Positions 2,199 to 59,854 of a stretch of 64,000 nucleotides of DNA are shown here, piece after piece; the first letter of the stretch is position 1; every line of letters starts with the position of its first letter. The notes beneath the pieces were generated by a model. The model had not been told where the DNA came from, made no database searches, and saw only the letters and a program-made list of their open reading frames with translations. The DNA is taken from positions 62,001 to 126,000 of the IMG/VR virus record IMGVR_UViG_3300013233_000093; one strand, 5' to 3'. A program made the translations under genes and the position numbers.

Positions 2199-2318
2199 CT
2201 CTATTTCTGTGTTCGTCGTAATTATCGGTCTATATTACTTTAGTGATACTTAGGTAATAATACTTAGGTGCACTGTTATAACTAATAGATCTCTAATATG
2301 AGATCAAAGGATTTAAAG
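2199..2318 (+). repeat. Type-A cassette leader, copy 1 (TATATTAC early-promoter core at 2231-2238, two leader hairpins, SD)
   Basis: Near-identical to 36423-36542 and 59423-59537; TATATTAC matches the phiKZ early promoter motif. Confidence 0.9.
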
Positions 2319-2576
2319 ATGAAACTGATTAAAGAATTCTCGTTTGGCGATAAATTTTGCTATAACCACGAGACCGGCTCTGTCGAAGTCCTCGACTTCG
2401 ACAACGAGGTGCTGGCTGAGGTTAAGTTCCCAGCAGATCCATTGATAACCACCATCGAGGTGGTGTCCCCGGGCACGCGGATCATTAAGGGGGTCATTCA
2501 CAGCGATCCATACTGGCTGTGCGTACCAAACCCAGGCGAAAACGCCGGGGAGGGGATATACGAGCTACCGACATAG
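2319..2576 (+). CDS. Small early protein, MKL(I/V)K…IYE family (85 aa)
   Basis: AAAGGA SD before ATG 2319; same start context as the paralogous cassettes. Confidence 0.8.
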   Translation: MKLIKEFSFGDKFCYNHETGSVEVLDFDNEVLAEVKFPADPLITTIEVVSPGTRIIKGVIHSDPYWLCVPNPGENAGEGIYELPT

Positions 2577-2587
2577 CTCGTATATCC

Positions 2588-2620
2588 CCTCCCCCTTCGG
2601 GGGAGGTTTTCTTTTTTTTT
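2588..2620 (+). terminator. Intrinsic terminator of cassette 1
   Basis: cctccccc-ttc-gggggagg followed by a long T tract; near-identical in cassettes 2 and 3. Confidence 0.85.
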
Positions 2621-2664
2621 TCAGTCCATGAGGTATTGCATGTACTAGACAGGAGTGATAAGAA

Positions 2665-4854
2665 ATGAATGTAAATCCGTTTATAAGAGAAGCCAAAGAG
2701 TATGTACGCACGCTGGACATCGTCGGTGAATACGTAAAAAACCAAACCACGTACATCTCCACGGTTACAGGAGATGCACCAGAGAAAGTAGAGTCTTTCG
2801 TAAAGGAACACATCGAACCTAAGTCCCCCATGATGCGTGTGTTGAAAAAGATACCTGGAGGCGATCGCGTAAAGGCCACTCAAGATCTTACTTCGTTCTT
2901 AAGTGAGGCAGATCACACAGGACGTTTTGTAAGCCCCAGTCTCGTGATGTATGAAAACCCTAAAAAGGAAGTCAGCTTCATCTCAAAGTTTGCACAGCAA
3001 GGCATGGATGCTCGTGACATACTTAAGGATAAAATGAAAGACGCTCGTGCTAACAAGGATAAAGAAAAGACCACGTTCTATCATAATGCACAGTGGTCTA
3101 AAAAGATCCTGAATAACATCATCTCCGGTGCAGGATCGTCGCCTTATAATCCCATCTACAATGCCAGTACACACACCACGTTGACATCCACGTGTCGTTG
3201 TGCTACTTCTTATTCCAACGCCACATGTGAGAAGTTCCTGGCGGGTAATCGTCATTACTACAATGAAGAGATTACTTTGTCAGACATGGCGGGACTTATT
3301 CGTATTACTGATTTAGTAAAGCTGGAGGCAGCTATGACTAAATACAAGTTGGATTATCCCACTCCAGAGTTCTTATATGGACACATTGTAAGATCTGTAC
3401 GTAAGTATTGGCGTAGAGCGGATGACAATTACGCAACTGTAAAAGAGTTCATCTTTGCGATGTCTCCTATTCAGAGAGCGGCAGTGGCATTTGTGAGTGA
3501 CTTGGAAGCACTATACCAAGTAAACCCTAAGTTCGTAGCTACAATGTTTAACACCATGTCTACGCCCACGACACACGAAGTCAAAGATCCTGACAAGTAT
3601 GTAAAGGCAATGAACGAAGAGATGGTAAGTCACGTAGGCTTGGTAATGAAACGCGTAGTAAACCATCGTAGGATCTTTAAGTTCAAACAAGAAGATCCTA
3701 AAGGGTACGCGCAATACGCAGGTTTTGCCGAGCACATGTTTAAAGCCTTGGATTACTACGGAGACTTTATACGTGCCACGCTGGTGACCGACTCATTGCC
3801 ATCGGGTATATATGCGTATCTGTTTTCGTTGCGTGATGTAGTGGTGGTGTCTGATACCGATTCCACGATCTTCACTACGGACGACTGGGTACAGCGTTTA
3901 GGTGACGGTTCTTCCTTTAGTGACCTAGGCGTATCCGTAGGCGCCACAGCTACGTTCTTGTTCTCATCTCATTTAGCACATAACCTGGCGCTGTTATCCA
4001 GACACTTAGGTGTACAAGATGATAAACTCTTTATGCTTACTATGAAAGGTGAGTTTTATCAGCCTGTGTTGGGCGTGACCAGTATGACCAAGCATTACTT
4101 CTCTTACACAGGAGCTTGTGAAGGCGATGTCTACGAGAAGTACGCGTTTGACGTCAAGGGTGTAAATCTTAAGAACTCTACACATCCTAAGGAGCTAACT
4201 GAGGGCAATGCTGCGTATATTAGACTGCTGATGGATGCAGTAGTGGAAGAACGCAAACTGAGTATGCTGGAGATCATGGAACTACCCATGCTAGCCGCTA
4301 ATAAGGTACGCCAGTCGCTGCTTGCGGGAGAAACGAAATATCTAACAGGACGTGAGGTAAAGCCCGCCACCGCGTACAAGAATCCAGACTCGTCCGTCTT
4401 TATACAGAAGAAGCTCTGGGATACCGTGTACGGCAAGGAACTTGGTCTAGCCGATACACCTCCTTATCGTGTGGTAAAGGTACCGCTGGTATTTGGACCT
4501 AGTAAAGCTAAGTTCGAATCGTGGCTACTTACACTACCCGATGAAAAGCAAGAGTTGTTCCGCAAGGCGTTGTCGCAAGCAGGCAAGACCTCCCTTACTT
4601 CGATATACCCACCACATGCAGTGGTAAACGGAGTGGGTGTGCCAAAAGAGTTGGTGTCTGTAATGGATATTGGTAAGTATGAATGCGAACTCATGACGGG
4701 CTATCTATCCGTGCTAGAGACCATTGGCATATTCATACGCAATAACAAGAATACACGTCTGTTGTCACAGGAGTTAAACTGGCAGACGTTTGTGGATAAC
4801 GGCAGTAAGCAATGGAACTTCATGGATCCTAAATTACAACTAGAGGCGGTGTAA
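2665..4854 (+). CDS. Split family-B DNA polymerase, subunit carrying motifs B and C (phiKZ gp50-like)
   Basis: KKILNNIISG (motif B-like), VVSDTDSTIF (motif C), TKHY and KGV; no exonuclease or motif A in this ORF. Confidence 0.88.
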   Translation: MNVNPFIREAKEYVRTLDIVGEYVKNQTTYISTVTGDAPEKVESFVKEHIEPKSPMMRVLKKIPGGDRVKATQDLTSFLSEADHTGRFVSPSLVMYENPKKEVSFISKFAQQGMDARDILKDKMKDARANKDKEKTTFYHNAQWSKKILNNIISGAGSSPYNPIYNASTHTTLTSTCRCATSYSNATCEKFLAGNRHYYNEEITLSDMAGLIRITDLVKLEAAMTKYKLDYPTPEFLYGHIVRSVRKYWRRADDNYATVKEFIFAMSPIQRAAVAFVSDLEALYQVNPKFVATMFNTMSTPTTHEVKDPDKYVKAMNEEMVSHVGLVMKRVVNHRRIFKFKQEDPKGYAQYAGFAEHMFKALDYYGDFIRATLVTDSLPSGIYAYLFSLRDVVVVSDTDSTIFTTDDWVQRLGDGSSFSDLGVSVGATATFLFSSHLAHNLALLSRHLGVQDDKLFMLTMKGEFYQPVLGVTSMTKHYFSYTGACEGDVYEKYAFDVKGVNLKNSTHPKELTEGNAAYIRLLMDAVVEERKLSMLEIMELPMLAANKVRQSLLAGETKYLTGREVKPATAYKNPDSSVFIQKKLWDTVYGKELGLADTPPYRVVKVPLVFGPSKAKFESWLLTLPDEKQELFRKALSQAGKTSLTSIYPPHAVVNGVGVPKELVSVMDIGKYECELMTGYLSVLETIGIFIRNNKNTRLLSQELNWQTFVDNGSKQWNFMDPKLQLEAV

Positions 4855-4860
4855 CTAAAT

Positions 4861-4908
4861 CACATACAGATCAGCTCCGTAAGGAGCTGATCTTATGTCG
4901 TATATTAC
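4861..4908 (+). repeat. 48-bp hairpin-TATG element upstream of head paralogue, copy 1
   Basis: cacatacagatcagctccgtaaggagctgatcttatgtcgtatattac; also at 6559-6606 and 29434-29481. Confidence 0.9.
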
Positions 4909-4925
4909 ATTTAGAGGATAGTAAG

Positions 4926-6527
4926 ATGGATAGTCGTGTGGTGGGTGAGTTGGAGTATGCTGAGTTGGTGTTGGATGGGGTGCTTAGTGGTCGTGTTATT
5001 AAGATCTATGAGGAGTCTGATAGTATTGCCGGTATGCTTTGCCTAGACAAAGACCGTGTGAAGTGGGTGTCTGGCGATAGCATCGCTGCAGACACTGTAG
5101 CAGGCATGCAGTTTATAGGACGTGCTTTTAAGGCTGTGTGGCGGCTCATAGTCCGTGCAGTCATGGCGGTAGTAAGTGGTCTTAAAAGACTCTGGGAGTG
5201 GCTTACCGGAGGCAAGGGCAGTACTAACCCTGATACTCCTGGTGCTACTTATCAGGATACACCTACTCCAGTAGGAGGTAAGATAGGTAAGCAAATGGCT
5301 CGTGAGGATAAGGCCGTCGTAGAGACTGCACTCATCGTAGCAGAGCTAGAAGAGAAGGGCGTAGATATAGAAAAGGCAGTAAGCGAAGTCACTCCTGAGA
5401 TGTTAGAAGCAGCACATCGCGAGAATAATACTCGGGACGAAGCACGGATATCTAAAATAGAGAAGGACGCGGAGGACGCTGAGGAGTTCAACAAGCGTGA
5501 GCGCGAAAGGTTAGACGGCATCACATCAAGGTTTAACGCAACCGCCAAGCAAGAAGCCGCTAATAAAAAGGAAGCCGAACGCATCGCAGCAGCAGATAAG
5601 GAGGTGAGGGAACGCGCAGCAGCAAGGGACGATGCAAGGATTAACGTATTGCGTAAACAACGCAGCGGGTTCACTCGTATAAAGATCACCAATGCCATAC
5701 GCGCCGCATACGCAGAAGAAGTTGGAAAAATCGAGAATAACGCAATCTTAACTTCCGGCGGCATAGACAAAGATAAAATGCGAAGAGCTGTGTATAAGGC
5801 GGCGTCAGGAAGCCAAAACATAAGCCGTATAGATCTAGCTGACTTGCGTTTTAATATTAAAGAAGTCGCTACAAACGGGCCGTCTACCGAGCGGACAAAG
5901 AGGGATGTTGGAGATGCATATAAACGCCTTATTGCTAAAGTTGTACTGCGTACAACCGAGAACGTGTACGAGATTTTTAATATGCCGGAGGGCTACGCGA
6001 GCGCGTTAATCGACGGCATGGTTGATGGCGTGGATGAAGATGAACTGGGCGGTGCGTTAGTATCACCCGACACCGGCGGGGGTAGAGTATTTACACTGAC
6101 CATGGGACGTACGGGCAAGCACACACCGAAGTTTACACTAGCCGTCACCTCACCCAGTACTCCGCCTACGTTGGAACACCTCGACATACCAGGCTTTAGC
6201 GCGGTCAGTGAGGAAATGCAGGAATATCACGAACATGTTTCCAAAACGTCTAAGGCATTCGAGCCGGCGCAAAAGCAAATCCTCGCTAAAATAAAGAAAG
6301 CGCTTAGAGTGCTGGACGAAGAAGCTTCTGCGTACAAGGATCATCCAGACGTGGAAAACATCCACTCCGTTATAGAATCCATAGGAAACGAGTATGCAAA
6401 CGTAACCAAGGCATTAAAGTTTGTAACGCATATCCTGAACGGTTACCAAGATGCGTACACATCCAGAGCCACATTGGCTAGGGAAATCGTGGGATTAGTA
6501 ATAAATAGCCCATCCCGGGAGAAGTAA
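4926..6527 (+). CDS. Inner-head/inner-body paralogue family protein with conserved leader (533 aa)
   Basis: Propeptide ending TVAGMQ, then amphipathic FIGRAFKAVWRLIV…LWEWLTGG helix as in the phiKZ gp93-type family; paralogous to 6622 and 29497. Confidence 0.7.
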   Translation: MDSRVVGELEYAELVLDGVLSGRVIKIYEESDSIAGMLCLDKDRVKWVSGDSIAADTVAGMQFIGRAFKAVWRLIVRAVMAVVSGLKRLWEWLTGGKGSTNPDTPGATYQDTPTPVGGKIGKQMAREDKAVVETALIVAELEEKGVDIEKAVSEVTPEMLEAAHRENNTRDEARISKIEKDAEDAEEFNKRERERLDGITSRFNATAKQEAANKKEAERIAAADKEVRERAAARDDARINVLRKQRSGFTRIKITNAIRAAYAEEVGKIENNAILTSGGIDKDKMRRAVYKAASGSQNISRIDLADLRFNIKEVATNGPSTERTKRDVGDAYKRLIAKVVLRTTENVYEIFNMPEGYASALIDGMVDGVDEDELGGALVSPDTGGGRVFTLTMGRTGKHTPKFTLAVTSPSTPPTLEHLDIPGFSAVSEEMQEYHEHVSKTSKAFEPAQKQILAKIKKALRVLDEEASAYKDHPDVENIHSVIESIGNEYANVTKALKFVTHILNGYQDAYTSRATLAREIVGLVINSPSREK

Positions 6528-6558
6528 CGCGAATGTACGTGGCTTCGCTTAACTAAAT

Positions 6559-6606
6559 CACATACAGATCAGCTCCTTAAGGAGCTGATTTTATGTCGTA
6601 TATTAC
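6559..6606 (+). repeat. 48-bp hairpin-TATG element, copy 2
   Basis: Two mismatches relative to copy 1. Confidence 0.9.
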
Positions 6607-6621
6607 TTAGAGGACAACAAG

Positions 6622-8121
6622 ATGGATGTGTATGGTGAGTTGGAGTATGCTGAGTTGGTGTTGGATGGTGTGTTGAGTGGTAGGGTGAGTCAGATCTATG
6701 AGGAGTCTGATACTATTGCTGGTATGATGGGTATGTGTGGTGATAGAGTGGAGTGGGTGTCTGGCGACTCCATAGGCGCAGACACTGTAGCAGGCATGCA
6801 GTTTATAGGTAAGGCAATCGGGGCAGTTTGGAACTTGATCTGGAACGCCATTAGCGCAGTGCTGATAGCTATAGCTAAATTATTCATTTGGTTGTTTACA
6901 GGCGGCAGTCCTGGTAAATCGGGTATAGCGGGCACGATCTATGAAAAGAAGATCACGCCCGCAGGTGGCTGGTTTGGCAAGCGGCAGGTGAAAGAAGATT
7001 ACCATGCGTTACGCATGCGACGACTAGCCGAGCACTCAGTGGCCGTAAATAACCTTACAGCAAGTCTTATTGAACCGGGTAATGCGATAAAGAAGGAACT
7101 CGCTTCTGCGAATGAACTGATTAAACAGCTAGACAAGATTAAGAAAGATCAAGATGCTGACAATAAGACGCTTGACAAGATGACCGACGATATGAAAGCC
7201 TTGCTTAAAGCCCAGGCCGACGAAAAGAAAGATATAGTTTCAGGCAAGACGGTAGCTGTTAACACACCCGCGAAGTCTGATTTCTCAGCCACCATTAAGG
7301 TTACCGATGAGTTGCGCGAAGCGTTCAAGTCGGATTTCGAATACTTGGATAAACATGCAGTGGCCAATAAGGGCACTGTAAGACCAGAAGAAAACCGCAA
7401 GGTAATGCATGACCTCACAGGATTTTCAAAGAAGGCACTGACTGCCGCAGGGGCATTAAAGGACATTCCAAAAGACTTTGACCGCATTATAAAATCCATC
7501 GAGGCTAAGAAATTCGAGAGTGCCGGTAAAGATCAAAAGGCGTTGGTTGATAAGGTGTCTTCTGTGTCAACTGGCATTGCTAACGCAGTCGGACTTGACC
7601 TCGATAATGCAGGTGAGATAGCCCGGTACGCGGATAAACGTGGGGGTTTGTCAAGCACAGATCTAGGTGGCGGCAAGTTTGTGCGGGTGTCTAGCGAAGA
7701 AATAAAAGCCATTCCCGGTCTTTATACATTCAGCGTTAGTGTCATAGAACCCAAAGACATCATCAAAGTAAAACAGCTGATAATCGAAAAGGGCGACTTT
7801 GACGAAGATGTAATAAGCAAGCGTCATCAAGATATGGCGAAGGATTTAAAGATCCACGCAGATGGCTTTGAAGCAGTTAAAAAGCTCGTTAAGGAAACTA
7901 ACGATAAGCTGACCGCTTACACAAAGGGCATGGAAAAAGACGGAGACGTTCCGCTTAGCCCTCTTTTACGTGCAGTCGGTAATAACGTCAAGGAGTACGT
8001 TAACACATACCCTAAGTTATCCAAGGTACTTACTCAGATAACGACGGCAATGCAGCACGATGGAAACATTAAACTTGGTTTACTGTCCGCCATAGCGGCA
8101 GATGGTAAGAAGGATAAATAA
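6622..8121 (+). CDS. Inner-head paralogue family protein (499 aa)
   Basis: GELEYAELVLDGVLSGRV…DTVAGMQFIG leader shared with 4926 and 29497. Confidence 0.7.
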   Translation: MDVYGELEYAELVLDGVLSGRVSQIYEESDTIAGMMGMCGDRVEWVSGDSIGADTVAGMQFIGKAIGAVWNLIWNAISAVLIAIAKLFIWLFTGGSPGKSGIAGTIYEKKITPAGGWFGKRQVKEDYHALRMRRLAEHSVAVNNLTASLIEPGNAIKKELASANELIKQLDKIKKDQDADNKTLDKMTDDMKALLKAQADEKKDIVSGKTVAVNTPAKSDFSATIKVTDELREAFKSDFEYLDKHAVANKGTVRPEENRKVMHDLTGFSKKALTAAGALKDIPKDFDRIIKSIEAKKFESAGKDQKALVDKVSSVSTGIANAVGLDLDNAGEIARYADKRGGLSSTDLGGGKFVRVSSEEIKAIPGLYTFSVSVIEPKDIIKVKQLIIEKGDFDEDVISKRHQDMAKDLKIHADGFEAVKKLVKETNDKLTAYTKGMEKDGDVPLSPLLRAVGNNVKEYVNTYPKLSKVLTQITTAMQHDGNIKLGLLSAIAADGKKDK

Positions 8122-28373: not shown

Positions 28374-29432
28374 ATGCAATCAGTAGTGGTCACCAAAGCC
28401 CTGGACGTGATACAGGCATGTGCAGAACACAACCAGTTTAACGAAGTCACAGGGCTGAAGAAAATGATCCGGCTTATTCCGGGGGCAGAGTTAAACGCAT
28501 ACGTGGCGTTGCGTATTCGGGATGCGATTAAACTGTTCAGTCCCAGCATCGATTTCTACGTATACTTCTACGGAGATATCAGTCTGCACGACTTGTGCGC
28601 GTATTCATTAGTGCCATCTGAAAATCGCTTTATAGGTAAAGACGCGATCCTGTCATTCGAGACTTCCCATCGTACGTTTAAAGACGTGGAGTTTAGTAAT
28701 TTTGCTGCGTATGCTTCTCTAGATGACGATGTCACCTCCAGAGCTCTGTCAGCGGCCGCTATGGGCTTTAACTACCCAGCAGAGACCTTACGCAAGTTCG
28801 CAGTGAACTCCATTGCTACGGGCGCTAAGGAGCTCCTTAATGAAGGCATCTTCACGCGTTACATTGGCATACACGAGCCACGTTTTAACGAAGTCACAAT
28901 GCTAGATAAAGAACGCACTGCCTCCGACCTAATTATACCCAGTAGCGAGCATAACTGGTATATCGACGGGGAGATCACACCGGATGTCTGTGCTGACACA
29001 TTACAATGGCTGGAGTCTGTAAGGTCGTCCGGTGATACGGAAGTGACCATTTGGTTTAACTCGCCACACAACACGCATATGAAAGACGGCATGTTGCTGG
29101 CATCTATCTTTGAGTCTGTGAACTTAAAGATCGTGGGCATAGCAGCTGGTGAATTAGCTGGTGGGTCTGTAATGGCATTTGCTGGTTGTAATAACGGTGA
29201 TCGTTTGACGCTTACTAATACGGAGTTTCTGTTGTCTCCGTACAAGATCGATCAATTGACCAGTCGGCAATCTGACTTGTTAAAACATATACAAGCCGGT
29301 AAGTTATGGTACGAACGTCTGGCTAAGTTTACATTAAACAAGAAAGACGCCTTACGTGACGTTTTAAATCAAGAACCAAGGATCTTAGGTTCTGACATCA
29401 TTAACTACGGCATTGCAGATGCAATGATTTAA
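28374..29432 (+). CDS. ClpP-like protein with two tandem domains; catalytic residues apparently lost
   Basis: C-half follows the ClpP pattern (YIDGEI, IWFNSP, G…A…AG, DR, YGIAD); N-half shows a weaker second copy. Confidence 0.65.
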   Translation: MQSVVVTKALDVIQACAEHNQFNEVTGLKKMIRLIPGAELNAYVALRIRDAIKLFSPSIDFYVYFYGDISLHDLCAYSLVPSENRFIGKDAILSFETSHRTFKDVEFSNFAAYASLDDDVTSRALSAAAMGFNYPAETLRKFAVNSIATGAKELLNEGIFTRYIGIHEPRFNEVTMLDKERTASDLIIPSSEHNWYIDGEITPDVCADTLQWLESVRSSGDTEVTIWFNSPHNTHMKDGMLLASIFESVNLKIVGIAAGELAGGSVMAFAGCNNGDRLTLTNTEFLLSPYKIDQLTSRQSDLLKHIQAGKLWYERLAKFTLNKKDALRDVLNQEPRILGSDIINYGIADAMI

Positions 29433-29433
29433 C

Positions 29434-29481
29434 CACATACAGATCAGCTCCTTAAGGAGCTGATCTTATGTCGTATATTAC
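29434..29481 (+). repeat. 48-bp hairpin-TATG element, copy 3
   Basis: One mismatch relative to copy 1 (4861). Confidence 0.9.
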
Positions 29482-29496
29482 CTAAAGGATAGTGAG

Positions 29497-31053
29497 ATGG
29501 ATAGTAGTATGGTGAGTGAGTTGGAGTATGCTGAGTTGGTGTTGGATGGGGTGCTTAGTGGTCGGGTTATTAAGATCTATGAGGAGTCTGATAGTATAGC
29601 TGGTATGCTTTGCCTAGACAAAGACCGTGTGGAGTGGGTGTCTGGCGACTCCATAGGCGCAGACACCGTAGCTGGCATGCAGTTTATAGGTAGAGCTTTT
29701 AAGGCTGTATGGCGTCTGATAGTCCGTGCAGTGATGGCGGTAGTAAACGGCCTTAAAAGACTCTGGGAGTGGCTTACCGGAGGTAAGGGCAGCACTAATC
29801 CGGATACTCCTGGTAGTGTGTATGAAGAGAAGCCCACTCCTGTGGGAGGAGTCATAGGCAAGGAAATGGCTAAGGAAGACAAGGCTAACGTAGAGACCGC
29901 GCTCGCCGTAGCAGAGCTAGACGAGAAGGGAGTGGATATAGAAAAAGCGGCGGAAGAAGCGGCAAGACAAGACGCCGCCAAAGTTGAACGTCGTAAGGCT
30001 GAAGCTGCCGAGGAGGCCAGACGTCGTAAGGACGGGGCGCGTGCAGCGCGCGATAAACAGGAGGCTGAATCAAAAAGGATCAATGATGAACGTATGGCCA
30101 GGGAAGAAGAAGAGGCCAAAATAGCACTGAAGCGTCATCGCAAGGAAGCACTGGCCGCAGAACTAAAAAGGAAGGAAGAACTGCTGCAACGAGCTAGGAA
30201 ACTCGACGGGCTATCGTTCACTATTGAAATACCTGACACGATGAGAGTATTTAAACAGTCTGATATTGCCAGCATAGAGCGAGACGCCATTATAACGGAA
30301 AATCGCGTCGATTATGAAACCATGCGGTCATACTTAGCTAAGTCTACTGAAGCAATCATTGCAATGGGCGATGCCGGGCTGAAGTATTTGACGTTAGGCG
30401 TAGCCTCGTTGTATCGGGCATATCCACAAGACGGCGAGTTTACCGATAAGACACGCGATAGTATAAACAGTGCCATATCGAATGTAACCGATGGCTACGT
30501 AAAACATGCAGCCAACACACTGCGCGTATTATTGCATGGTCATGAAAAGACATACCGCACCAGCCTTGTGGTTGGCGAACGCATGACCGGAAACATGGGC
30601 GGGGGCGATGCGTATCTGGTAACGGTTAGCGCAACGCCTGTAGATGGACAGCTGTCCGTGACATCATCCCTTGTGCCAGCTAAGACAAGACCTGCGCTTA
30701 AATATGTAATGTTTAATGGCACCGAGCTGTCAAATAAAAATATGGTGGACTCGCATTACGAGACGAGGGTGTACGTCAGAGACTTAAATCAGGCCAGCGA
30801 GGCACAAGCTGAAGCACTCGCGGATGCCATCCGCGAGTTTAACGGTTACGTAAAGAAGTTAGACGGCAAGCCGGGTGCTGAGGTTATCACGGACGTTATT
30901 AAAAATGTGATATCGCTAGGAACCGTGGGTGGTACTGCAATAGGCAATGTCGTAAAGCGCCTGTCGAAGTATCAAGCAGCGACCGCAAACGAAGCTGTGT
31001 TCCGCAAAGACTTGTTTATAAACATATTAGACAACGAACCCATGCCCAAATAA
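29497..31053 (+). CDS. Inner-head paralogue family protein (518 aa)
   Basis: First ~150 aa highly similar to 4926; TVAGMQ followed by an amphipathic helix. Confidence 0.7.
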   Translation: MDSSMVSELEYAELVLDGVLSGRVIKIYEESDSIAGMLCLDKDRVEWVSGDSIGADTVAGMQFIGRAFKAVWRLIVRAVMAVVNGLKRLWEWLTGGKGSTNPDTPGSVYEEKPTPVGGVIGKEMAKEDKANVETALAVAELDEKGVDIEKAAEEAARQDAAKVERRKAEAAEEARRRKDGARAARDKQEAESKRINDERMAREEEEAKIALKRHRKEALAAELKRKEELLQRARKLDGLSFTIEIPDTMRVFKQSDIASIERDAIITENRVDYETMRSYLAKSTEAIIAMGDAGLKYLTLGVASLYRAYPQDGEFTDKTRDSINSAISNVTDGYVKHAANTLRVLLHGHEKTYRTSLVVGERMTGNMGGGDAYLVTVSATPVDGQLSVTSSLVPAKTRPALKYVMFNGTELSNKNMVDSHYETRVYVRDLNQASEAQAEALADAIREFNGYVKKLDGKPGAEVITDVIKNVISLGTVGGTAIGNVVKRLSKYQAATANEAVFRKDLFINILDNEPMPK

Positions 31054-36422: not shown

Positions 36423-36542
36423 CTCTATTTCTGTGTTCGTCGTAATTATCGGTCTATATTACTTTAGTGATACTTAGGTAATAATACTTAGGTACGTTGT
36501 TCTAAACTATTAGATCTCTTATTAGAGATCAAAGGATTTAAA
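36423..36542 (+). repeat. Type-A cassette leader, copy 2 (TATATTAC at 36455-36462)
   Basis: First ~70 nt identical to copy 1. Confidence 0.9.
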
Positions 36543-36782
36543 ATGAAATTAGTAAAAGAGTTCGAAAATGTCACACATGTGATTTTCAGTGGTACCGATC
36601 TCTTTGTCATGATGTGCGACGGCGAGGAAGACACCAGTGGTAATCTTCCACTTCCCACTGGTGTCTGCGAGCGGTTCACACTGTCAAGCCATGGCATGAC
36701 AGTCGAGTTTTCAGGCTCTAAATACGAATACATCGCCGAAACCGACGAGGAGTCGGGATGGGTAGGGATCTACGAGAAGTAG
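36543..36782 (+). CDS. Small early protein, MKL(I/V)K…IYE family (79 aa)
   Basis: MKLVKEF…WVGIYEK; AAAGGA SD. Confidence 0.8.
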   Translation: MKLVKEFENVTHVIFSGTDLFVMMCDGEEDTSGNLPLPTGVCERFTLSSHGMTVEFSGSKYEYIAETDEESGWVGIYEK

Positions 36783-36788
36783 ATCCCG

Positions 36789-36821
36789 CCTCCCCTTCGG
36801 GGGAGGTTTTCTTTTTTCTTT
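36789..36821 (+). terminator. Intrinsic terminator of cassette 2
   Basis: cctcccc-ttcg-ggggagg followed by a T tract. Confidence 0.85.
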
Positions 36822-38460: not shown

Positions 38461-40113
38461 TTATCGTTGTGCACGATACGCTGACAGTAAATCACCCATG
38501 GTGGGTAACTGGTAAAGCTGTGTGCCAAGTAATATGGCATTGTTACGAGTGGCGGTCATATCGATGCCGACTTGTCGTTGCGTCATTTGATCCATCCCTT
38601 GGATGCCGCACACCTCTCGCATCTTAGTGGCCACCGATGCATTAGATATAACGCCCACGGTAGGATACCCACTTTTGATATCCACGTCGTAACAGTTCTT
38701 AAAGATGCGCGTTCCTACTCCTTCGATATCAAGATAGATATCAGCACCCTTTCGATTGATAAGCTTACTGGACACCGTGGCGATCCATTTCTTCATGGAC
38801 GGTGTAAGACGATCCAGCTTCTCGTCGGTCATATTAGGAGCCGTGGTGCAGATCACAAACCCGTCTTTAAGTCTTGCAAAGTGTAGCTCGTCTGCCAGTA
38901 TGCTTGGTCCAGAGAACAGCTTCTGTATATCTGAGATCCCAGATGTCGTTAACAGAGAGTAAGAAAGATCGCCGGTAGCCTCGTTAATCAACTCCATGCC
39001 AAAGCAATCGAAGACGTTGTAAATGCCATACTCGATCTTATAATCCTTCTGCATGGATTTATGCCATTCGATGTCAGGCAGGGAATCGTCTGCTCCGATC
39101 TTCAACTTACCCCGACCTGTTTCTATTTGACAGATGGTGTCAAACTTAAAGTTAGGTGCGTTAGACTCGGACACACGATGGTGCTTATAGAAACTCATCA
39201 TGTCCACAAACTGAAAGGAAGCCATCGTGTAGATTTTGTGCCACAAGTCAGCAAAATGCTTAGAGGTCACTTTACCGCCCGCAGTCTCTTTACGCTGAGG
39301 ATCTTCAATCCATTTGAAGTACTTGTATTTCTTAGGCACAGATGGGTCGGAGAACACCACCGCAGGATCTACACCACACCGATCCATCTCTTCCATCATT
39401 TTGGGCACATCGAATCCAGTCCCCCAAATGCCAACGAGGTCTGGTTTCAGTTTGTGCAGTGAACCAATTAGCGTGCGGATGACGCCCATGGAGTTATCGC
39501 ACACCTTTACATATAACTTACAGCCACGTTCTTTAATGTCCTTTTTAAACTCACGTTTGTAAAGAGCGTACAGTTTTTCGACATCGTCCGGATCATCCCC
39601 AAACCATTTCTTATTCAGGGCAAGTATGTGTTTGTCTTTATACGTCACTGCACCAGAGATGATCTCGCCGTCAGAACTGTACACGTTTGTCTCGAAATCG
39701 AGATAGGCCGCATTAGCCGCTGGCTTGTATGTGGGAAACTTAGTACGATATGCTTCGCGGATAGCCACGGTGGGTGTTAAGTCCAGTCCGTATATATAAG
39801 GACTTTTCTTTAGTTCTCCTAACCATGTCTTGCCATGGCGTCCAAGTGCCTTGCCGACCTTCATAGGCTTCATGGCTTGTGTGCTAGAGAACTTACGCAG
39901 ATGTTCCAGACCCTCGAACTCTTTTTTCTGTTTATGGGTCTTCTGCATAGCGACGTTGCTTACATAATAGTCCAAGGCAAAGTTTTCGATTAAGCGAAGG
40001 TTTGTACGCTCTACACCGTCGGCGTCCATGACGCGCTCGTTAACCAATACAGCGTCGTCATTACTCCCGTCATTTGCCTTTGCGTAACTGGCAATCATGC
40101 ATGCTTTCTTCAT
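38461..40113 (-). CDS. Split family-B DNA polymerase, 3'-5' exonuclease plus motif A subunit (phiKZ gp82-like)
   Basis: ExoI YLDFET, ExoII WGTGFDVP, ExoIII YNVFDC and polymerase motif A DVDIKSGYP. Confidence 0.88.
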   Translation of the reverse strand: MKKACMIASYAKANDGSNDDAVLVNERVMDADGVERTNLRLIENFALDYYVSNVAMQKTHKQKKEFEGLEHLRKFSSTQAMKPMKVGKALGRHGKTWLGELKKSPYIYGLDLTPTVAIREAYRTKFPTYKPAANAAYLDFETNVYSSDGEIISGAVTYKDKHILALNKKWFGDDPDDVEKLYALYKREFKKDIKERGCKLYVKVCDNSMGVIRTLIGSLHKLKPDLVGIWGTGFDVPKMMEEMDRCGVDPAVVFSDPSVPKKYKYFKWIEDPQRKETAGGKVTSKHFADLWHKIYTMASFQFVDMMSFYKHHRVSESNAPNFKFDTICQIETGRGKLKIGADDSLPDIEWHKSMQKDYKIEYGIYNVFDCFGMELINEATGDLSYSLLTTSGISDIQKLFSGPSILADELHFARLKDGFVICTTAPNMTDEKLDRLTPSMKKWIATVSSKLINRKGADIYLDIEGVGTRIFKNCYDVDIKSGYPTVGVISNASVATKMREVCGIQGMDQMTQRQVGIDMTATRNNAILLGTQLYQLPTMGDLLSAYRAQR

Positions 40114-56529: not shown

Positions 56530-56544
56530 GCTGTGTTGACTAAA

Positions 56545-56603
56545 TATTCAAAACTATATCACTATTATGATGGATAACGTGTTGTTGTCTTTAGACTAGA
56601 GGT
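56545..56603 (+). promoter_or_regulatory. Type-B early promoter plus leader hairpin
   Basis: Exact 26-mer at 56545-56570. Confidence 0.8.
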
Positions 56604-56610
56604 TTATGCG

Positions 56611-56886
56611 ATGAAATTAGTAACGACGTATCCCCATGCAGATAATTTTTGGCTTAATAACGCGGAACGTGTACTGCAACTACGAACGCCGGGCATGTCG
56701 GAAACACACCTGCTTATGTTTACAGCAGAATACATTGAACGGGCGTGCGGAACTGCACATGCATTGGGACACCTAGACCCAATAAAGGCGGTGTTGTACG
56801 TACCGGGCGCAGAGTCGCCGTGCAACTGTGTCCTTGCAGTAGCCACCGACAAAGGCGTGTTTATTTACGAGAAGCTGTCCGACTAA
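56611..56886 (+). CDS. Small early protein, MKLV…GVFIYE family (91 aa)
   Basis: GAGG SD; same termini as the type-A cassette proteins. Confidence 0.75.
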   Translation: MKLVTTYPHADNFWLNNAERVLQLRTPGMSETHLLMFTAEYIERACGTAHALGHLDPIKAVLYVPGAESPCNCVLAVATDKGVFIYEKLSD

Positions 56887-59422: not shown

Positions 59423-59537
59423 TATTTCTGTGTTCGCCGTAAATATCGGTATATATTACTTTAGTGATACTTAGGTAATAATACTTAGGTACACTGTTCT
59501 AACTTAATAGATCTCTAAGAGATCAAAGGATTTAAAG
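59423..59537 (+). repeat. Type-A cassette leader, copy 3 (TATATTAC at 59452-59459)
   Basis: Few mismatches relative to copies 1 and 2. Confidence 0.9.
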
Positions 59538-59807
59538 ATGAAATTAGTAAAAATGATCGAAGCATGTACTTCTGTCCTGCATGTAGAATTTGATACCGTG
59601 TTTGACGTGATCCGTATTGAACGGAATGGTGTTCCGTGTGGTGTCTTCGAATTGGGGTTTACCCCCAACGTTAACGGCGTCGGTAACCGGCTTAACCTCG
59701 CCGACGGGGTTAAAACACAATACATCGCCAACCCCCACGGCGATGCTTCCGTCCTTGTCATGGACACCCCAACCGGGGTATTCATCTACGAGATCCCCTG
59801 CGAATAG
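59538..59807 (+). CDS. Small early protein, MKL(I/V)K…IYE family (89 aa)
   Basis: MKLVKMIE…TGVFIYEIPCE. Confidence 0.8.
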   Translation: MKLVKMIEACTSVLHVEFDTVFDVIRIERNGVPCGVFELGFTPNVNGVGNRLNLADGVKTQYIANPHGDASVLVMDTPTGVFIYEIPCE

Positions 59808-59817
59808 GGGATCTCGG

Positions 59818-59854
59818 CCTCCCCTTATCGGGGGAGGTTTTCTTTTTTCTTTTT
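59818..59854 (+). terminator. Intrinsic terminator of cassette 3
   Basis: cctcccc-ttatcg-ggggagg followed by a T tract. Confidence 0.85.

What the first reader, a model, noticed from the sequence alone, without database searches (positions are those of the whole stretch)
36543..36782. MKL(I/V)…G(V/I)xIYE mini-protein family: conserved end strands, unrelated middles
Seen: four proteins of 79-91 aa (2319, 36543, 56611, 59538) start MKL(I/V) and end EGIYE, VGIYE, GVFIYE or GVFIYE, with beta-strand-like but barely alignable middles. One (56611) sits behind the other promoter class, so the family is not only a by-product of the DNA repeat. Inference: the end strands look like complementary strands of beta-propeller blades (kLvk.f and G.i.iyd patterns; NVTHVIFSGTDLFV resembles a blade A-B turn). 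They could be roughly two-blade modules that oligomerise, perhaps combinatorially, into variable binding surfaces.
Basis: inference. Interest (0 to 1): 0.6.

Follow-up and report, generated by a model that had tools for sequence, protein, structure and literature searches.

The report
Orphan small early phage protein family
A newly seen giant phage carries four small, probably all-beta, early genes that share only their first and last few residues; the family is real and has no known relatives, but its fold, its function and the proposed propeller assembly remain unproven.

Summary
Four coding ORFs (85, 79, 91 and 89 aa) are the only small ORFs in the 222.9-kb genome that start MKL(I/V). All four end G..IYE within 7 residues of the stop (Fisher p 6e-9). 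Their middles are not significantly alike as protein or as DNA.

Synonymous codon differences at the conserved residues show that the ends are conserved as protein, not as a spill-over of DNA repeats. So does the fourth copy, which lacks the leader and terminator repeats.

Three copies are single-gene early units. Each has a phiKZ-type early promoter, a roughly 85-nt leader that occurs seven times in the genome, the ORF, a hairpin over the IYE and stop codons, and an intrinsic terminator. Their flanks are 84-89% identical, while the ORF bodies are about 50% identical.

The genome is a complete phiKZ-like jumbo phage from a microbial-mat metagenome with no close relatives. No Pfam, PHROG, NCBIfam or PDB match was found, and no credible homologue among 1.8 billion representatives.

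Low-confidence AlphaFold2 models (pLDDT 57 and 64) give eight-strand all-beta meanders. Propellers dominate the weak structural matches of one model, but nothing rises above noise, and the trimer test gave no verdict. I read the family as fast-diverging early binder proteins; the propeller idea is neither shown nor excluded.

The parts
2202..2318 (+). Early promoter (TATATTAC core at 2231) plus the conserved leader, which has a tandem ATACTTAGGT motif and a hairpin just before the AAGGA ribosome site. Belongs to copy 1.
   Evidence: Repeat families D3/D7/D9; seven-copy leader alignment A4 with 85% mean column identity; promoter motif as in phiKZ and 201phi2-1 (PMC7058600 Table 2).
2319..2576 (+). 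Family member 1, 85 aa (P0001). The database gene call of 92 aa starts at an ATG in the leader hairpin loop (2298) and is probably too long.
2547..2621 (+). 3' hairpin over the G-I-Y-E-L codons and the stop (2547-2594). Its extended form competes with the terminator stem (2588-2606), which is followed by a T-run.
   Evidence: RNA fold -46.1 kcal/mol, z -6.8; repeat family D8.
36426..36542 (+). Early promoter plus conserved leader of copy 2.
36543..36782 (+). Family member 2, 79 aa (P0002). This is the ORF the finding points to.
36765..36821 (+). Hairpin over the G-I-Y codons and the stop (36765-36787), followed directly by the terminator hairpin (36788-36807) and a T-run.
   Evidence: RNA fold -32.7 kcal/mol; repeat family D8.
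56536..56610 (+). Plain core early promoter without the leader, with a GAGG ribosome site 9 nt before the ATG. Belongs to copy 3.
   Evidence: Repeat families D2/D4; alignment A2.
56611..56886 (+). Family member 3, 91 aa (P0003). It has no 3' hairpin or terminator. The database gene call is the 56-aa form from an internal Met.
   Evidence: The first 13 nt of the ORF are identical to copies 2 and 4.
59423..59537 (+). Early promoter plus conserved leader of copy 4.
59538..59807 (+). Family member 4, 89 aa (P0004).
59789..59852 (+). Hairpin over the Y-E-I-P codons and the stop (59789-59816), followed by the terminator hairpin (59817-59838) and a T-run.
   Evidence: RNA fold -39.2 kcal/mol, z -4.5; repeat family D8.

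Best explanation
These are four paralogues of a lineage-specific family of small (79-91 aa), probably all-beta proteins. They are made early in infection by a phiKZ-like jumbo phage. Three copies are self-contained single-gene early units: an early promoter of the virion-RNA-polymerase type, a shared leader, the ORF and a double-hairpin terminator. The fourth opens an ordinary early transcript.

What is shown: selection keeps the first strand (MKL-I/V-K) and a C-terminal beta-hairpin (hydrophobic strand, turn, G-x-x-I-Y-E) at the protein level, while the six strands between have diverged beyond recognition.

What is inferred: the two end strands are the structural clasp or interface of an eight-strand antiparallel meander, and the variable middle provides different binding surfaces. 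On that reading the family is a set of fast-evolving early binders or inhibitors aimed at host targets (take-over or counter-defence). The regulatory flanks stay nearly identical because they are working promoter, leader and terminator elements that are shared with unrelated genes.
For: - The ORFs are real and the end motifs are not chance.
- The constraint is at protein level. Synonymous codons differ at the conserved Leu, Ile, Gly, Val and Phe. The spacer between IYE and the terminator is not conserved. The hairpin register shifts between copies. Copy 3 keeps both motifs without leader, hairpin or terminator.
- A C-terminal hairpin profile picks out only these four proteins in the genome, at E 1e-9 to 1e-10.
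- The AlphaFold2 models of P0001 and P0004 have eight strands at matching positions, and the end strands are the most confident part of the P0004 model.
- The promoter core matches the published early-promoter motifs of phiKZ and 201phi2-1 (PMC7598289).
- The genome has split RNA polymerase beta subunits, a DnaB helicase and a major head protein of phiKZ-type families.
- Flanks are 84-89% identical against about 50% for the ORF bodies.
- The leader also drives four unrelated ORFs.
Against: - Homology of the middles cannot be demonstrated, so common descent of the whole proteins rests on about 12 residues plus matching length and predicted strand pattern.
- The models are of low confidence (pLDDT 57 and 64), and both were built on the same four-row alignment, so they are not independent.
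- Only two of the four proteins were folded. The middle of P0003 is rich in helix-forming residues and may differ.
- There is no expression data: the only run that holds the sequence is a DNA run that is probably the source sample.
- The proposed function has no direct evidence at all.
Confidence: 0.5

Rival explanations
1. One reading: each protein is a two-blade beta-propeller module. The conserved first and last strands join neighbouring subunits, so that homo- or hetero-oligomers close a six- or eight-bladed ring with variable surfaces.
For: - Eight predicted strands, which equals two sets of four.
- About 35 of the 50 best VIA-align rows for the P0004 model are propellers (coronin, neuraminidase, prolyl oligopeptidase, WD40 proteins, AAL lectin). 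Model residues 11-89 lie on about 80 contiguous residues, that is two blades.
- Language-model features of P0003 lie nearest to WD40 and propeller fragments, at 0.90-0.92.
- The best hit of P0002 in the big search is an NHL-repeat propeller protein.
- From my own knowledge: two-blade lectins such as RSL of Ralstonia trimerise into six-bladed propellers.
Against: - Every one of these signals is below the tools' stated noise levels: Z is 6.4 at most against a typical best of 7-8; 129-149 shared features against the 170 expected of true kin; and the NHL E-value comes from summing four near-identical repeats.
- A CARDB repeat protein (Ig-like) scores almost as well against P0002.
- hhalign to the NHL profile gives under 3% for three members and for the family profile.
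- No internal repeat and no Pfam blade.
- The P0001 model's neighbours are beta-sandwiches.
- Foldseek finds nothing.
- An all-meander low-confidence model will resemble blades in any case.
Confidence: 0.13
2. The ORFs are unrelated passengers. A mobile regulatory cassette, like the PeSLs of T4-type phages, has captured or swapped different inserts. The shared end residues are simply encoded by the cassette's recombining arms, which reach a few codons into the ORF.
For: - Flanks are 84-89% identical while ORF bodies are at random level.
- The hairpin overlaps the IYE codons in three copies.
- The first 13 nt of the ORF are identical in copies 2, 3 and 4.
- There is a precedent for promoter/stem-loop cassettes that shuffle small ORFans (PMC2839356, PMC4122927).
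Against: - Copy 1 spells the same N-terminal residues with different codons.
- The Ile of IYE uses all three of its codons.
- The IYE codons are separated from the terminator repeat by unconserved sequence of different length in each copy.
- The hairpin arms are in a different register in each copy.
- Copy 3 has both motifs but neither the leader nor the terminator.
- Four other leader copies carry ORFs without the motifs.
Confidence: 0.15
3. The end motifs are linear signals, for example for localisation, export from or import into a phage compartment, proteolysis or turnover. They would be attached to otherwise unrelated small proteins and would not be structural strands.
For: Conservation is confined to the extreme termini. 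From my own knowledge there is a precedent in the T4 internal proteins, whose short conserved N-terminal targeting sequence precedes unrelated bodies.
Against: - The genes are behind early promoters, whereas capsid targeting is a late function.
- The C-terminal motif does not fit the S/A/G-x-E cleavage rule known to me for the phiKZ head protease.
- Both ends are predicted as regular beta-strands and are the most confident parts of the model.
Confidence: 0.1
4. The ORFs are not translated, and the transcripts act as RNAs.
For: Strong RNA structure at both ends of three of the units. All four loci also have long antisense ORFs.
Against: - In-frame codon usage is typical of this genome's genes, and the other frames and the antisense score lower.
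- Ribosome sites lie at the proper spacing.
- Synonymous variation occurs at conserved residues.
- No Rfam family matches.
Confidence: 0.03

Closest known systems
PeSL (promoter-early stem-loop) regulatory cassettes around small ORFans in T4-type phages (PMC2839356, PMC4122927)
   Same: Small genes of unknown function, each bracketed by a highly conserved early promoter and a stem-loop terminator that recur around the genome. The non-coding flanks are far better conserved than the genes.
   Different: - The promoter here is of the phiKZ virion-RNA-polymerase type, not sigma-70-like.
- There is an extra, invariant 5' leader of about 85 nt.
- The bracketed genes here form one protein family with ends conserved at protein level.
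- No evidence for recombination or mini-circles was obtainable here.
Early single-gene transcription units of phiKZ-like jumbo phages (early promoter TATATTAC; PMC7058600, PMC7598289)
   Same: The core motif TATAT(T/C)AC followed by ..GTG/ATG, about 30 copies all on one strand, and a genome with split multisubunit RNA polymerase genes.
   Different: The genome is only about 33% identical in DNA polymerase to any catalogued phage. The leader and the protein family have no counterpart in the collections searched.
Two-blade lectins that trimerise into six-bladed propellers (RSL and BambL; named from my own knowledge, not tested by sequence here)
   Same: Size of about 90 aa, an all-beta eight-strand meander, and the idea of ring closure by oligomerisation.
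   Different: No sequence or profile similarity, no internal two-fold repeat, structural matches below noise, and no verdict from the trimer prediction.
84-aa ORF of the uncultured huge phage LR756500.1 (392729-392980)
   Same: It aligns without gaps to P0002 over 78 residues at 29% identity. It has the same MKL..EF start, a shared acidic DEEDTS-like stretch, and ends in a G-x-I-x-Y-K-E-like motif near the stop.
   Different: - The database E-value is only 4.
- Neither the family profile nor the big HMMER search recovers it.
- That genome shows no excess of such ORFs over a reversed-pattern control.
- It is a lead, not an established relative.

Membership tests
Beta-propeller (WD40 / NHL / other blade repeats) | Sequence match to a blade-repeat model, or a detectable internal repeat | tested here: not met
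   Pfam has no hit at E up to 1. The halves of each protein are not similar. hhalign to an NHL two-unit profile gives 50% for P0002 but 0.3-2% for the other three members and for the family alignment.
Beta-propeller (WD40 / NHL / other blade repeats) | Structural match to consecutive blades that stands clearly above background | tested here: inconclusive
   For the P0004 model (pLDDT 64), propellers dominate the top 50 rows but Z is 6.4 at most. For the P0001 model (pLDDT 57), the top rows are beta-sandwiches with Z 4.2 at most. Foldseek has no hit at E below 0.05. The atlas search by shape is mixed, at TM about 0.5.
Beta-propeller (WD40 / NHL / other blade repeats) | Closure of a ring, here by oligomerisation of two-blade units | tested here: inconclusive
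   The homotrimer job on P0004 returned 'no answer', which the tool says is evidence neither for nor against.
DUF2283 (PF10049), a lead from memory: small proteins that start MKI.YD and end ..G.ivGIE | Match to the Pfam model | tested here: not met
   A six-frame search of the whole genome with PF10049 found no match at E up to 10, while the control genomes did match. The Pfam scan of the four proteins was empty.
YopX (phage family with a G-K-x-IYEGD motif) | Match to the Pfam model, with the motif in mid-protein | tested here: not met
   The Pfam scan was empty. In this family the motif is C-terminal. The YopX-like ORFs that the degenerate DNA pattern picked up in IMG/VR continue well past IYE.
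PeSL-type regulatory cassette | A recurring early promoter and a stem-loop terminator that bracket small ORFans | tested here: met
   Repeat families D2-D4 and D7-D9, RNA folds and flank identities of 84-89%.
PeSL-type regulatory cassette | A sigma-70-like promoter, and recombination between cassettes (mini-circles, gene replacement between close relatives) | not testable with these tools
   The promoter is of the phiKZ early type, so the sigma-70 part is not met on sequence. No close relative of the phage exists in any collection searched, so recombination cannot be traced.
phiKZ-type early (virion RNA polymerase) promoter | A conserved AT-rich TATATTAC-like core repeated upstream of presumed early operons | tested here: met
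   There are 7 leader-type and about 26 plain copies, all on the + strand. The core matches the published phiKZ and 201phi2-1 motifs. Timing of transcription was not measured.

The most novel reading that the evidence does not exclude
The four proteins are two-blade propeller modules. Their conserved first and last strands act as a universal 'velcro', so that paralogues with different middles assemble combinatorially into mixed propeller rings, giving the phage a small library of binding surfaces early in infection.
Probability: 0.1. Interest if true: 0.8.

Novelty: new variant of a known kind. Interest (0 to 1): 0.35.

Why it matters
Giant phages devote many early genes to small proteins of unknown function, and several such proteins in other phages have turned out to be host take-over or counter-defence factors. 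This case offers a clean natural experiment: four paralogues in one genome, with selection visibly confined to the two terminal strands, and three of them placed under identical expression signals. If the ends prove to be a scaffold or an assembly interface that tolerates any middle, the family would be a compact natural binder scaffold and a handle on early host-phage conflict in an uncultured lineage. If not, it is one more lineage-specific ORFan family. The conserved leader and the double hairpin are also ready-made candidates for studying early gene control in phiKZ-like phages.

Tried and rejected
**Searches for relatives: none credible**
- Megablast and tblastn against 50,697 phage records.
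- Three word-index searches of 5.8 billion clusters, which returned only the window's own proteins.
- A full HMMER search of 1.84 billion representatives with P0002. It returned only two repeat proteins, one NHL and one CARDB, whose scores are sums over near-identical repeats.
- Pfam, PHROGs, NCBIfam and PDB sequences.
- IMG/VR searched with the helicase and DNA polymerase neighbours.
- Leader motifs searched in IMG/VR and JGI metagenomes.
- A degenerate start-gap-end DNA pattern in IMG/VR gave 30 hits, none a member.
- The same kind of pattern in LR756500.1 gave no more hits than its control, and the family profile found nothing there.

**Other members in this genome: none**
- phmmer and a C-terminal hairpin profile found none.
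- The 120-aa ORF behind the leader copy at genome position 34719 looked similar by eye but was not picked up.

**Ideas tested and dropped**
- DUF2283, a lead from memory, was rejected.
- Cross-frame or DNA-level kinship of the middles was rejected.
- An internal two-fold repeat was rejected.

**Jobs that gave nothing usable**
- Complex prediction on a P0004 homotrimer returned no verdict, so it counts neither way.
- Sequencing runs: only one DNA run, from a microbial-mat metagenome and probably the source sample, holds the region, as short identical contigs. No RNA run holds it, so nothing can be said about expression.
- Rfam has no family for the leader or terminator.

**Not done**
The ESM Atlas holds its own model of P0002 at pLDDT 0.50.
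I redid it from references.

Full report
**What the window is.** The window is bases 62,001-126,000 of a single 222,906-bp virus record with direct terminal repeats, rated complete, with 47.8% G+C. It encodes split RNA polymerase beta subunits, DNA polymerase-like proteins, a DnaB-like helicase and a major head protein of PHROG families typical of phiKZ-like jumbo phages. Its DNA polymerase is only about 33% identical to the nearest catalogued phages, which infect Vibrio, Xanthomonas and Erwinia. No close relative was found in the phage records, IMG/VR or JGI metagenomes. The only public run that holds the sequence is a microbial-mat metagenome DNA run, probably the source.

**The observation.** It is confirmed.
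- Four + strand ORFs start MKL(I/V) and end in G..IYE followed by 1-5 residues: 2319-2576 (85 aa), 36543-36782 (79 aa), 56611-56886 (91 aa) and 59538-59807 (89 aa).
- They are the only small ORFs in the genome with that start, and all four have that end. Among 1,421 Met-started ORFs of 50-150 aa this gives Fisher p = 6e-9.
- Codon usage in frame is that of real genes of this genome. The other frames, and the antisense ORFs that overlap all four loci, score lower.
- The middles are not demonstrably related. phmmer gives no pair below E about 1, shuffle z-scores for the middles are 2.4 or less, and there is no DNA-level or cross-frame similarity.
- Beyond the strict motif, copies 3 and 4 share a 14-residue C-terminal hairpin (z = 6 for the C-terminal halves). 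A profile of the last 20 residues picks out just these four proteins in the genome.

**The setting.** Copies 1, 2 and 4 are each a self-contained unit.
- Upstream lies a repeat of about 130 nt that is 84-89% identical between copies. It consists of a promoter core (TATATTAC, then ..GTGAT) and a leader. The leader holds a tandem ATACTTAGGT motif and a small hairpin that ends just before the AAGGA ribosome site.
- The core matches the published early-promoter motifs of phiKZ and 201phi2-1 (PMC7058600 Table 2). Such motifs mark early, virion-RNA-polymerase promoters in this group (PMC7598289).
- The leader occurs seven times in the genome. The other four copies drive unrelated ORFs.
- A plainer form of the same core, without the leader, occurs about 26 times, always on the + strand. 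One of these stands before copy 3.
- Downstream of copies 1, 2 and 4, a strong hairpin covers the IYE codons and the TAG stop. An almost identical G+C-rich terminator hairpin and T-run follow at once. Copy 3 has neither.

**Are the conserved ends protein or DNA?** They are protein.
- The conserved Leu is CTG in copy 1 and TTA in the others.
- The Ile of IYE uses ATA, ATC and ATT. Gly, Val and Phe also vary at third positions.
- The IYE codons are separated from the terminator repeat by unconserved sequence of different length.
- The hairpin that covers them is in a different register in each copy: over G-I-Y-E-L, over G-I-Y and over Y-E-I-P. The RNA structure has therefore been rebuilt around a fixed peptide, not the reverse.
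- Copy 3 keeps both peptide motifs without any of the flanking repeats.
- Four leader copies carry ORFs without the motifs.

It also weighs against the cassette-passenger rival. The striking contrast remains, however: flanks at 84-89% identity against ORF bodies at about 50%, which is random level. The closest described parallel is the PeSL promoter/stem-loop cassette around small ORFans in T4-type phages (PMC2839356, PMC4122927).

**Relatives.** No credible relative was found.
- Pfam, PHROGs, NCBIfam and PDB sequences give nothing.
- Word-index searches return only the window's own proteins.
- The exhaustive HMMER search with P0002 returns two repeat proteins, one an NHL propeller and one made of CARDB domains. 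Their E-values come from summing four near-identical weak matches.
- In hhalign, P0002 reaches 50% probability against the NHL units and 28% against CARDB. The other three members and the family profile stay under 3%.
- One lead is an 84-aa ORF in the 462-kb uncultured phage LR756500.1. It aligns to P0002 from Met1 to the C-terminus without gaps at 29% identity, with shuffle z = 12.7. The database E-value is 4, the family profile does not find it, and that genome has no excess of such ORFs. I treat it as possibly real, at roughly even odds.

**Fold.** The fold is all-beta but otherwise open.
- AlphaFold2 on the four-row alignment gives all-beta models. P0001 has pLDDT 57 with seven clear strands plus a short eighth. 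P0004 has pLDDT 64 and pTM 0.56, with eight strands at 2-8, 12-17, 22-29, 32-40, 49-53, 59-63, 71-77 and 80-86, and its end strands are the most confident part. The strand positions correspond between the two models, but the models share one alignment and so are not independent.
- VIA-align against 48,161 chains gave, for P0001, a best Z of 4.2 among beta-sandwiches. For P0004 the best Z was 6.4, and about 35 of the 50 top rows were propellers aligned over two consecutive blades. Small inhibitor and immunity proteins also appeared: PliI at Z 5.8 and CdiI at Z 4.9. The tool states that a best Z of 7-8 is typical for models without a true match, so this is a hint only.
- Foldseek against PDB and BFVD finds nothing. 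The atlas search by shape is mixed.
- Language-model features of P0003 sit nearest to WD40 and propeller fragments at 0.90-0.92, with fewer shared features than true kin usually show.
- The homotrimer prediction returned no verdict.
- No internal repeat is detectable.

**Reading.** I commit to the following.
- Probability about 0.5: the four are true paralogues of a lineage-specific family of small early all-beta proteins. The terminal strands carry the structural or interface constraint, and the middles have diverged under relaxed or diversifying selection. The function would be binding or inhibiting host targets early in infection. The family and the protein-level constraint are shown. The early timing follows from promoter similarity. 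The fold class is a low-confidence prediction. The function is inference.
- Probability 0.13: the propeller-assembly idea. It remains the most interesting reading that the data do not exclude.
- Probability 0.15: the cassette-passenger idea.
- Probability 0.1: terminal signal peptides.
- Probability 0.03: non-coding RNA.

**Novelty.** The protein family has no detectable relatives, so it is new as a family. The phenomenon is known: lineage-specific small early paralogues bracketed by recurring promoter and terminator elements. Here it appears in a phiKZ-like phage, with an added invariant leader and with the unusual feature that only the peptide ends are conserved. I rate it a new variant of a known kind, of moderate interest.

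Noticed in passing
window 2231-2318, 36455-36542, 59452-59537; genome positions 16191, 34643, 182470, 198929 (loci L002-L005): A 5' leader of about 85 nt occurs seven times, always on the + strand and directly after an early promoter. It has an invariant tandem ATACTTAGGT motif and a hairpin (TAGATCTCT, variable loop, GAGATC) that abuts the AAGGA ribosome site. Mean column identity is 85%, and the loop is the only freely varying part. It drives seven different genes, so it looks like a shared regulatory RNA or operator element. No Rfam family matches.
   Followed up: partly
window 9398, 36840, 54278, 56547, 62770, 63493 and about 20 more places in the genome: About 26 copies of the plain early-promoter core (TTCAAAACTATATCACTATTATGAT) were found, every one on the + strand and often just after a hairpin and T-run, although roughly a quarter of the genes lie on the - strand.
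   Followed up: partly
window 2547-2621: In copy 1 the hairpin over the stop codon can extend to 21 bp by pairing a GGGGAGGGG stretch, which encodes G-E-G, with the 5' arm of the terminator. The long hairpin and the terminator are therefore mutually exclusive. The next gene, the DNA polymerase-like ORF at 2665, has no promoter of its own in the gap. This may be a read-through switch. In all three units the TAG stop sits at the 5' edge of the hairpin's 3' arm.
   Followed up: partly
window 4858-5211, 6556-6901, 29431-29782: A second paralogue set: three genes of 533, 499 and 518 aa (4926-6527, 6622-8121, 29497-31053). They share a conserved upstream hairpin plus a TATATTAC promoter and up to 91% identity over their first 300 nt. 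The 533-aa member has no PHROG match.
   Followed up: no
window 2298-2576 and 56716-56886: The gene calls held in the protein database differ from the conserved starts. Copy 1 is called 92 aa from an ATG inside the leader hairpin loop, and copy 3 is called 56 aa from an internal Met. The conserved MKL start, the ribosome-site spacing and the 13 identical first bases argue for 2319 and 56611.
   Followed up: yes
window 2313-2501, 36488-36733, 56604-56852, 59504-59785 (- strand): Each of the four genes is overlapped by an antisense ORF of similar length (62-93 aa). Two of these are longer than the sense ORF and would win a longest-ORF gene call. Their codon-usage scores are lower (-0.05 to 0.20), so they are probably not coding.
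   Followed up: yes
L001:1501-1755 (LR756500.1 392729-392983): An 84-aa ORF of an uncultured 462-kb phage resembles P0002 from end to end: MKL start, a shared acidic stretch and a Y-K-E end. Its middle looks helical. It may be a distant relative, but this is statistically unproven.
   Followed up: partly
window 2665-4854 (+) and 38461-40113 (-): Two separate DNA polymerase-like genes of 729 and 550 aa lie 34 kb apart on opposite strands. The second matches PHROG 3011.
   Followed up: no
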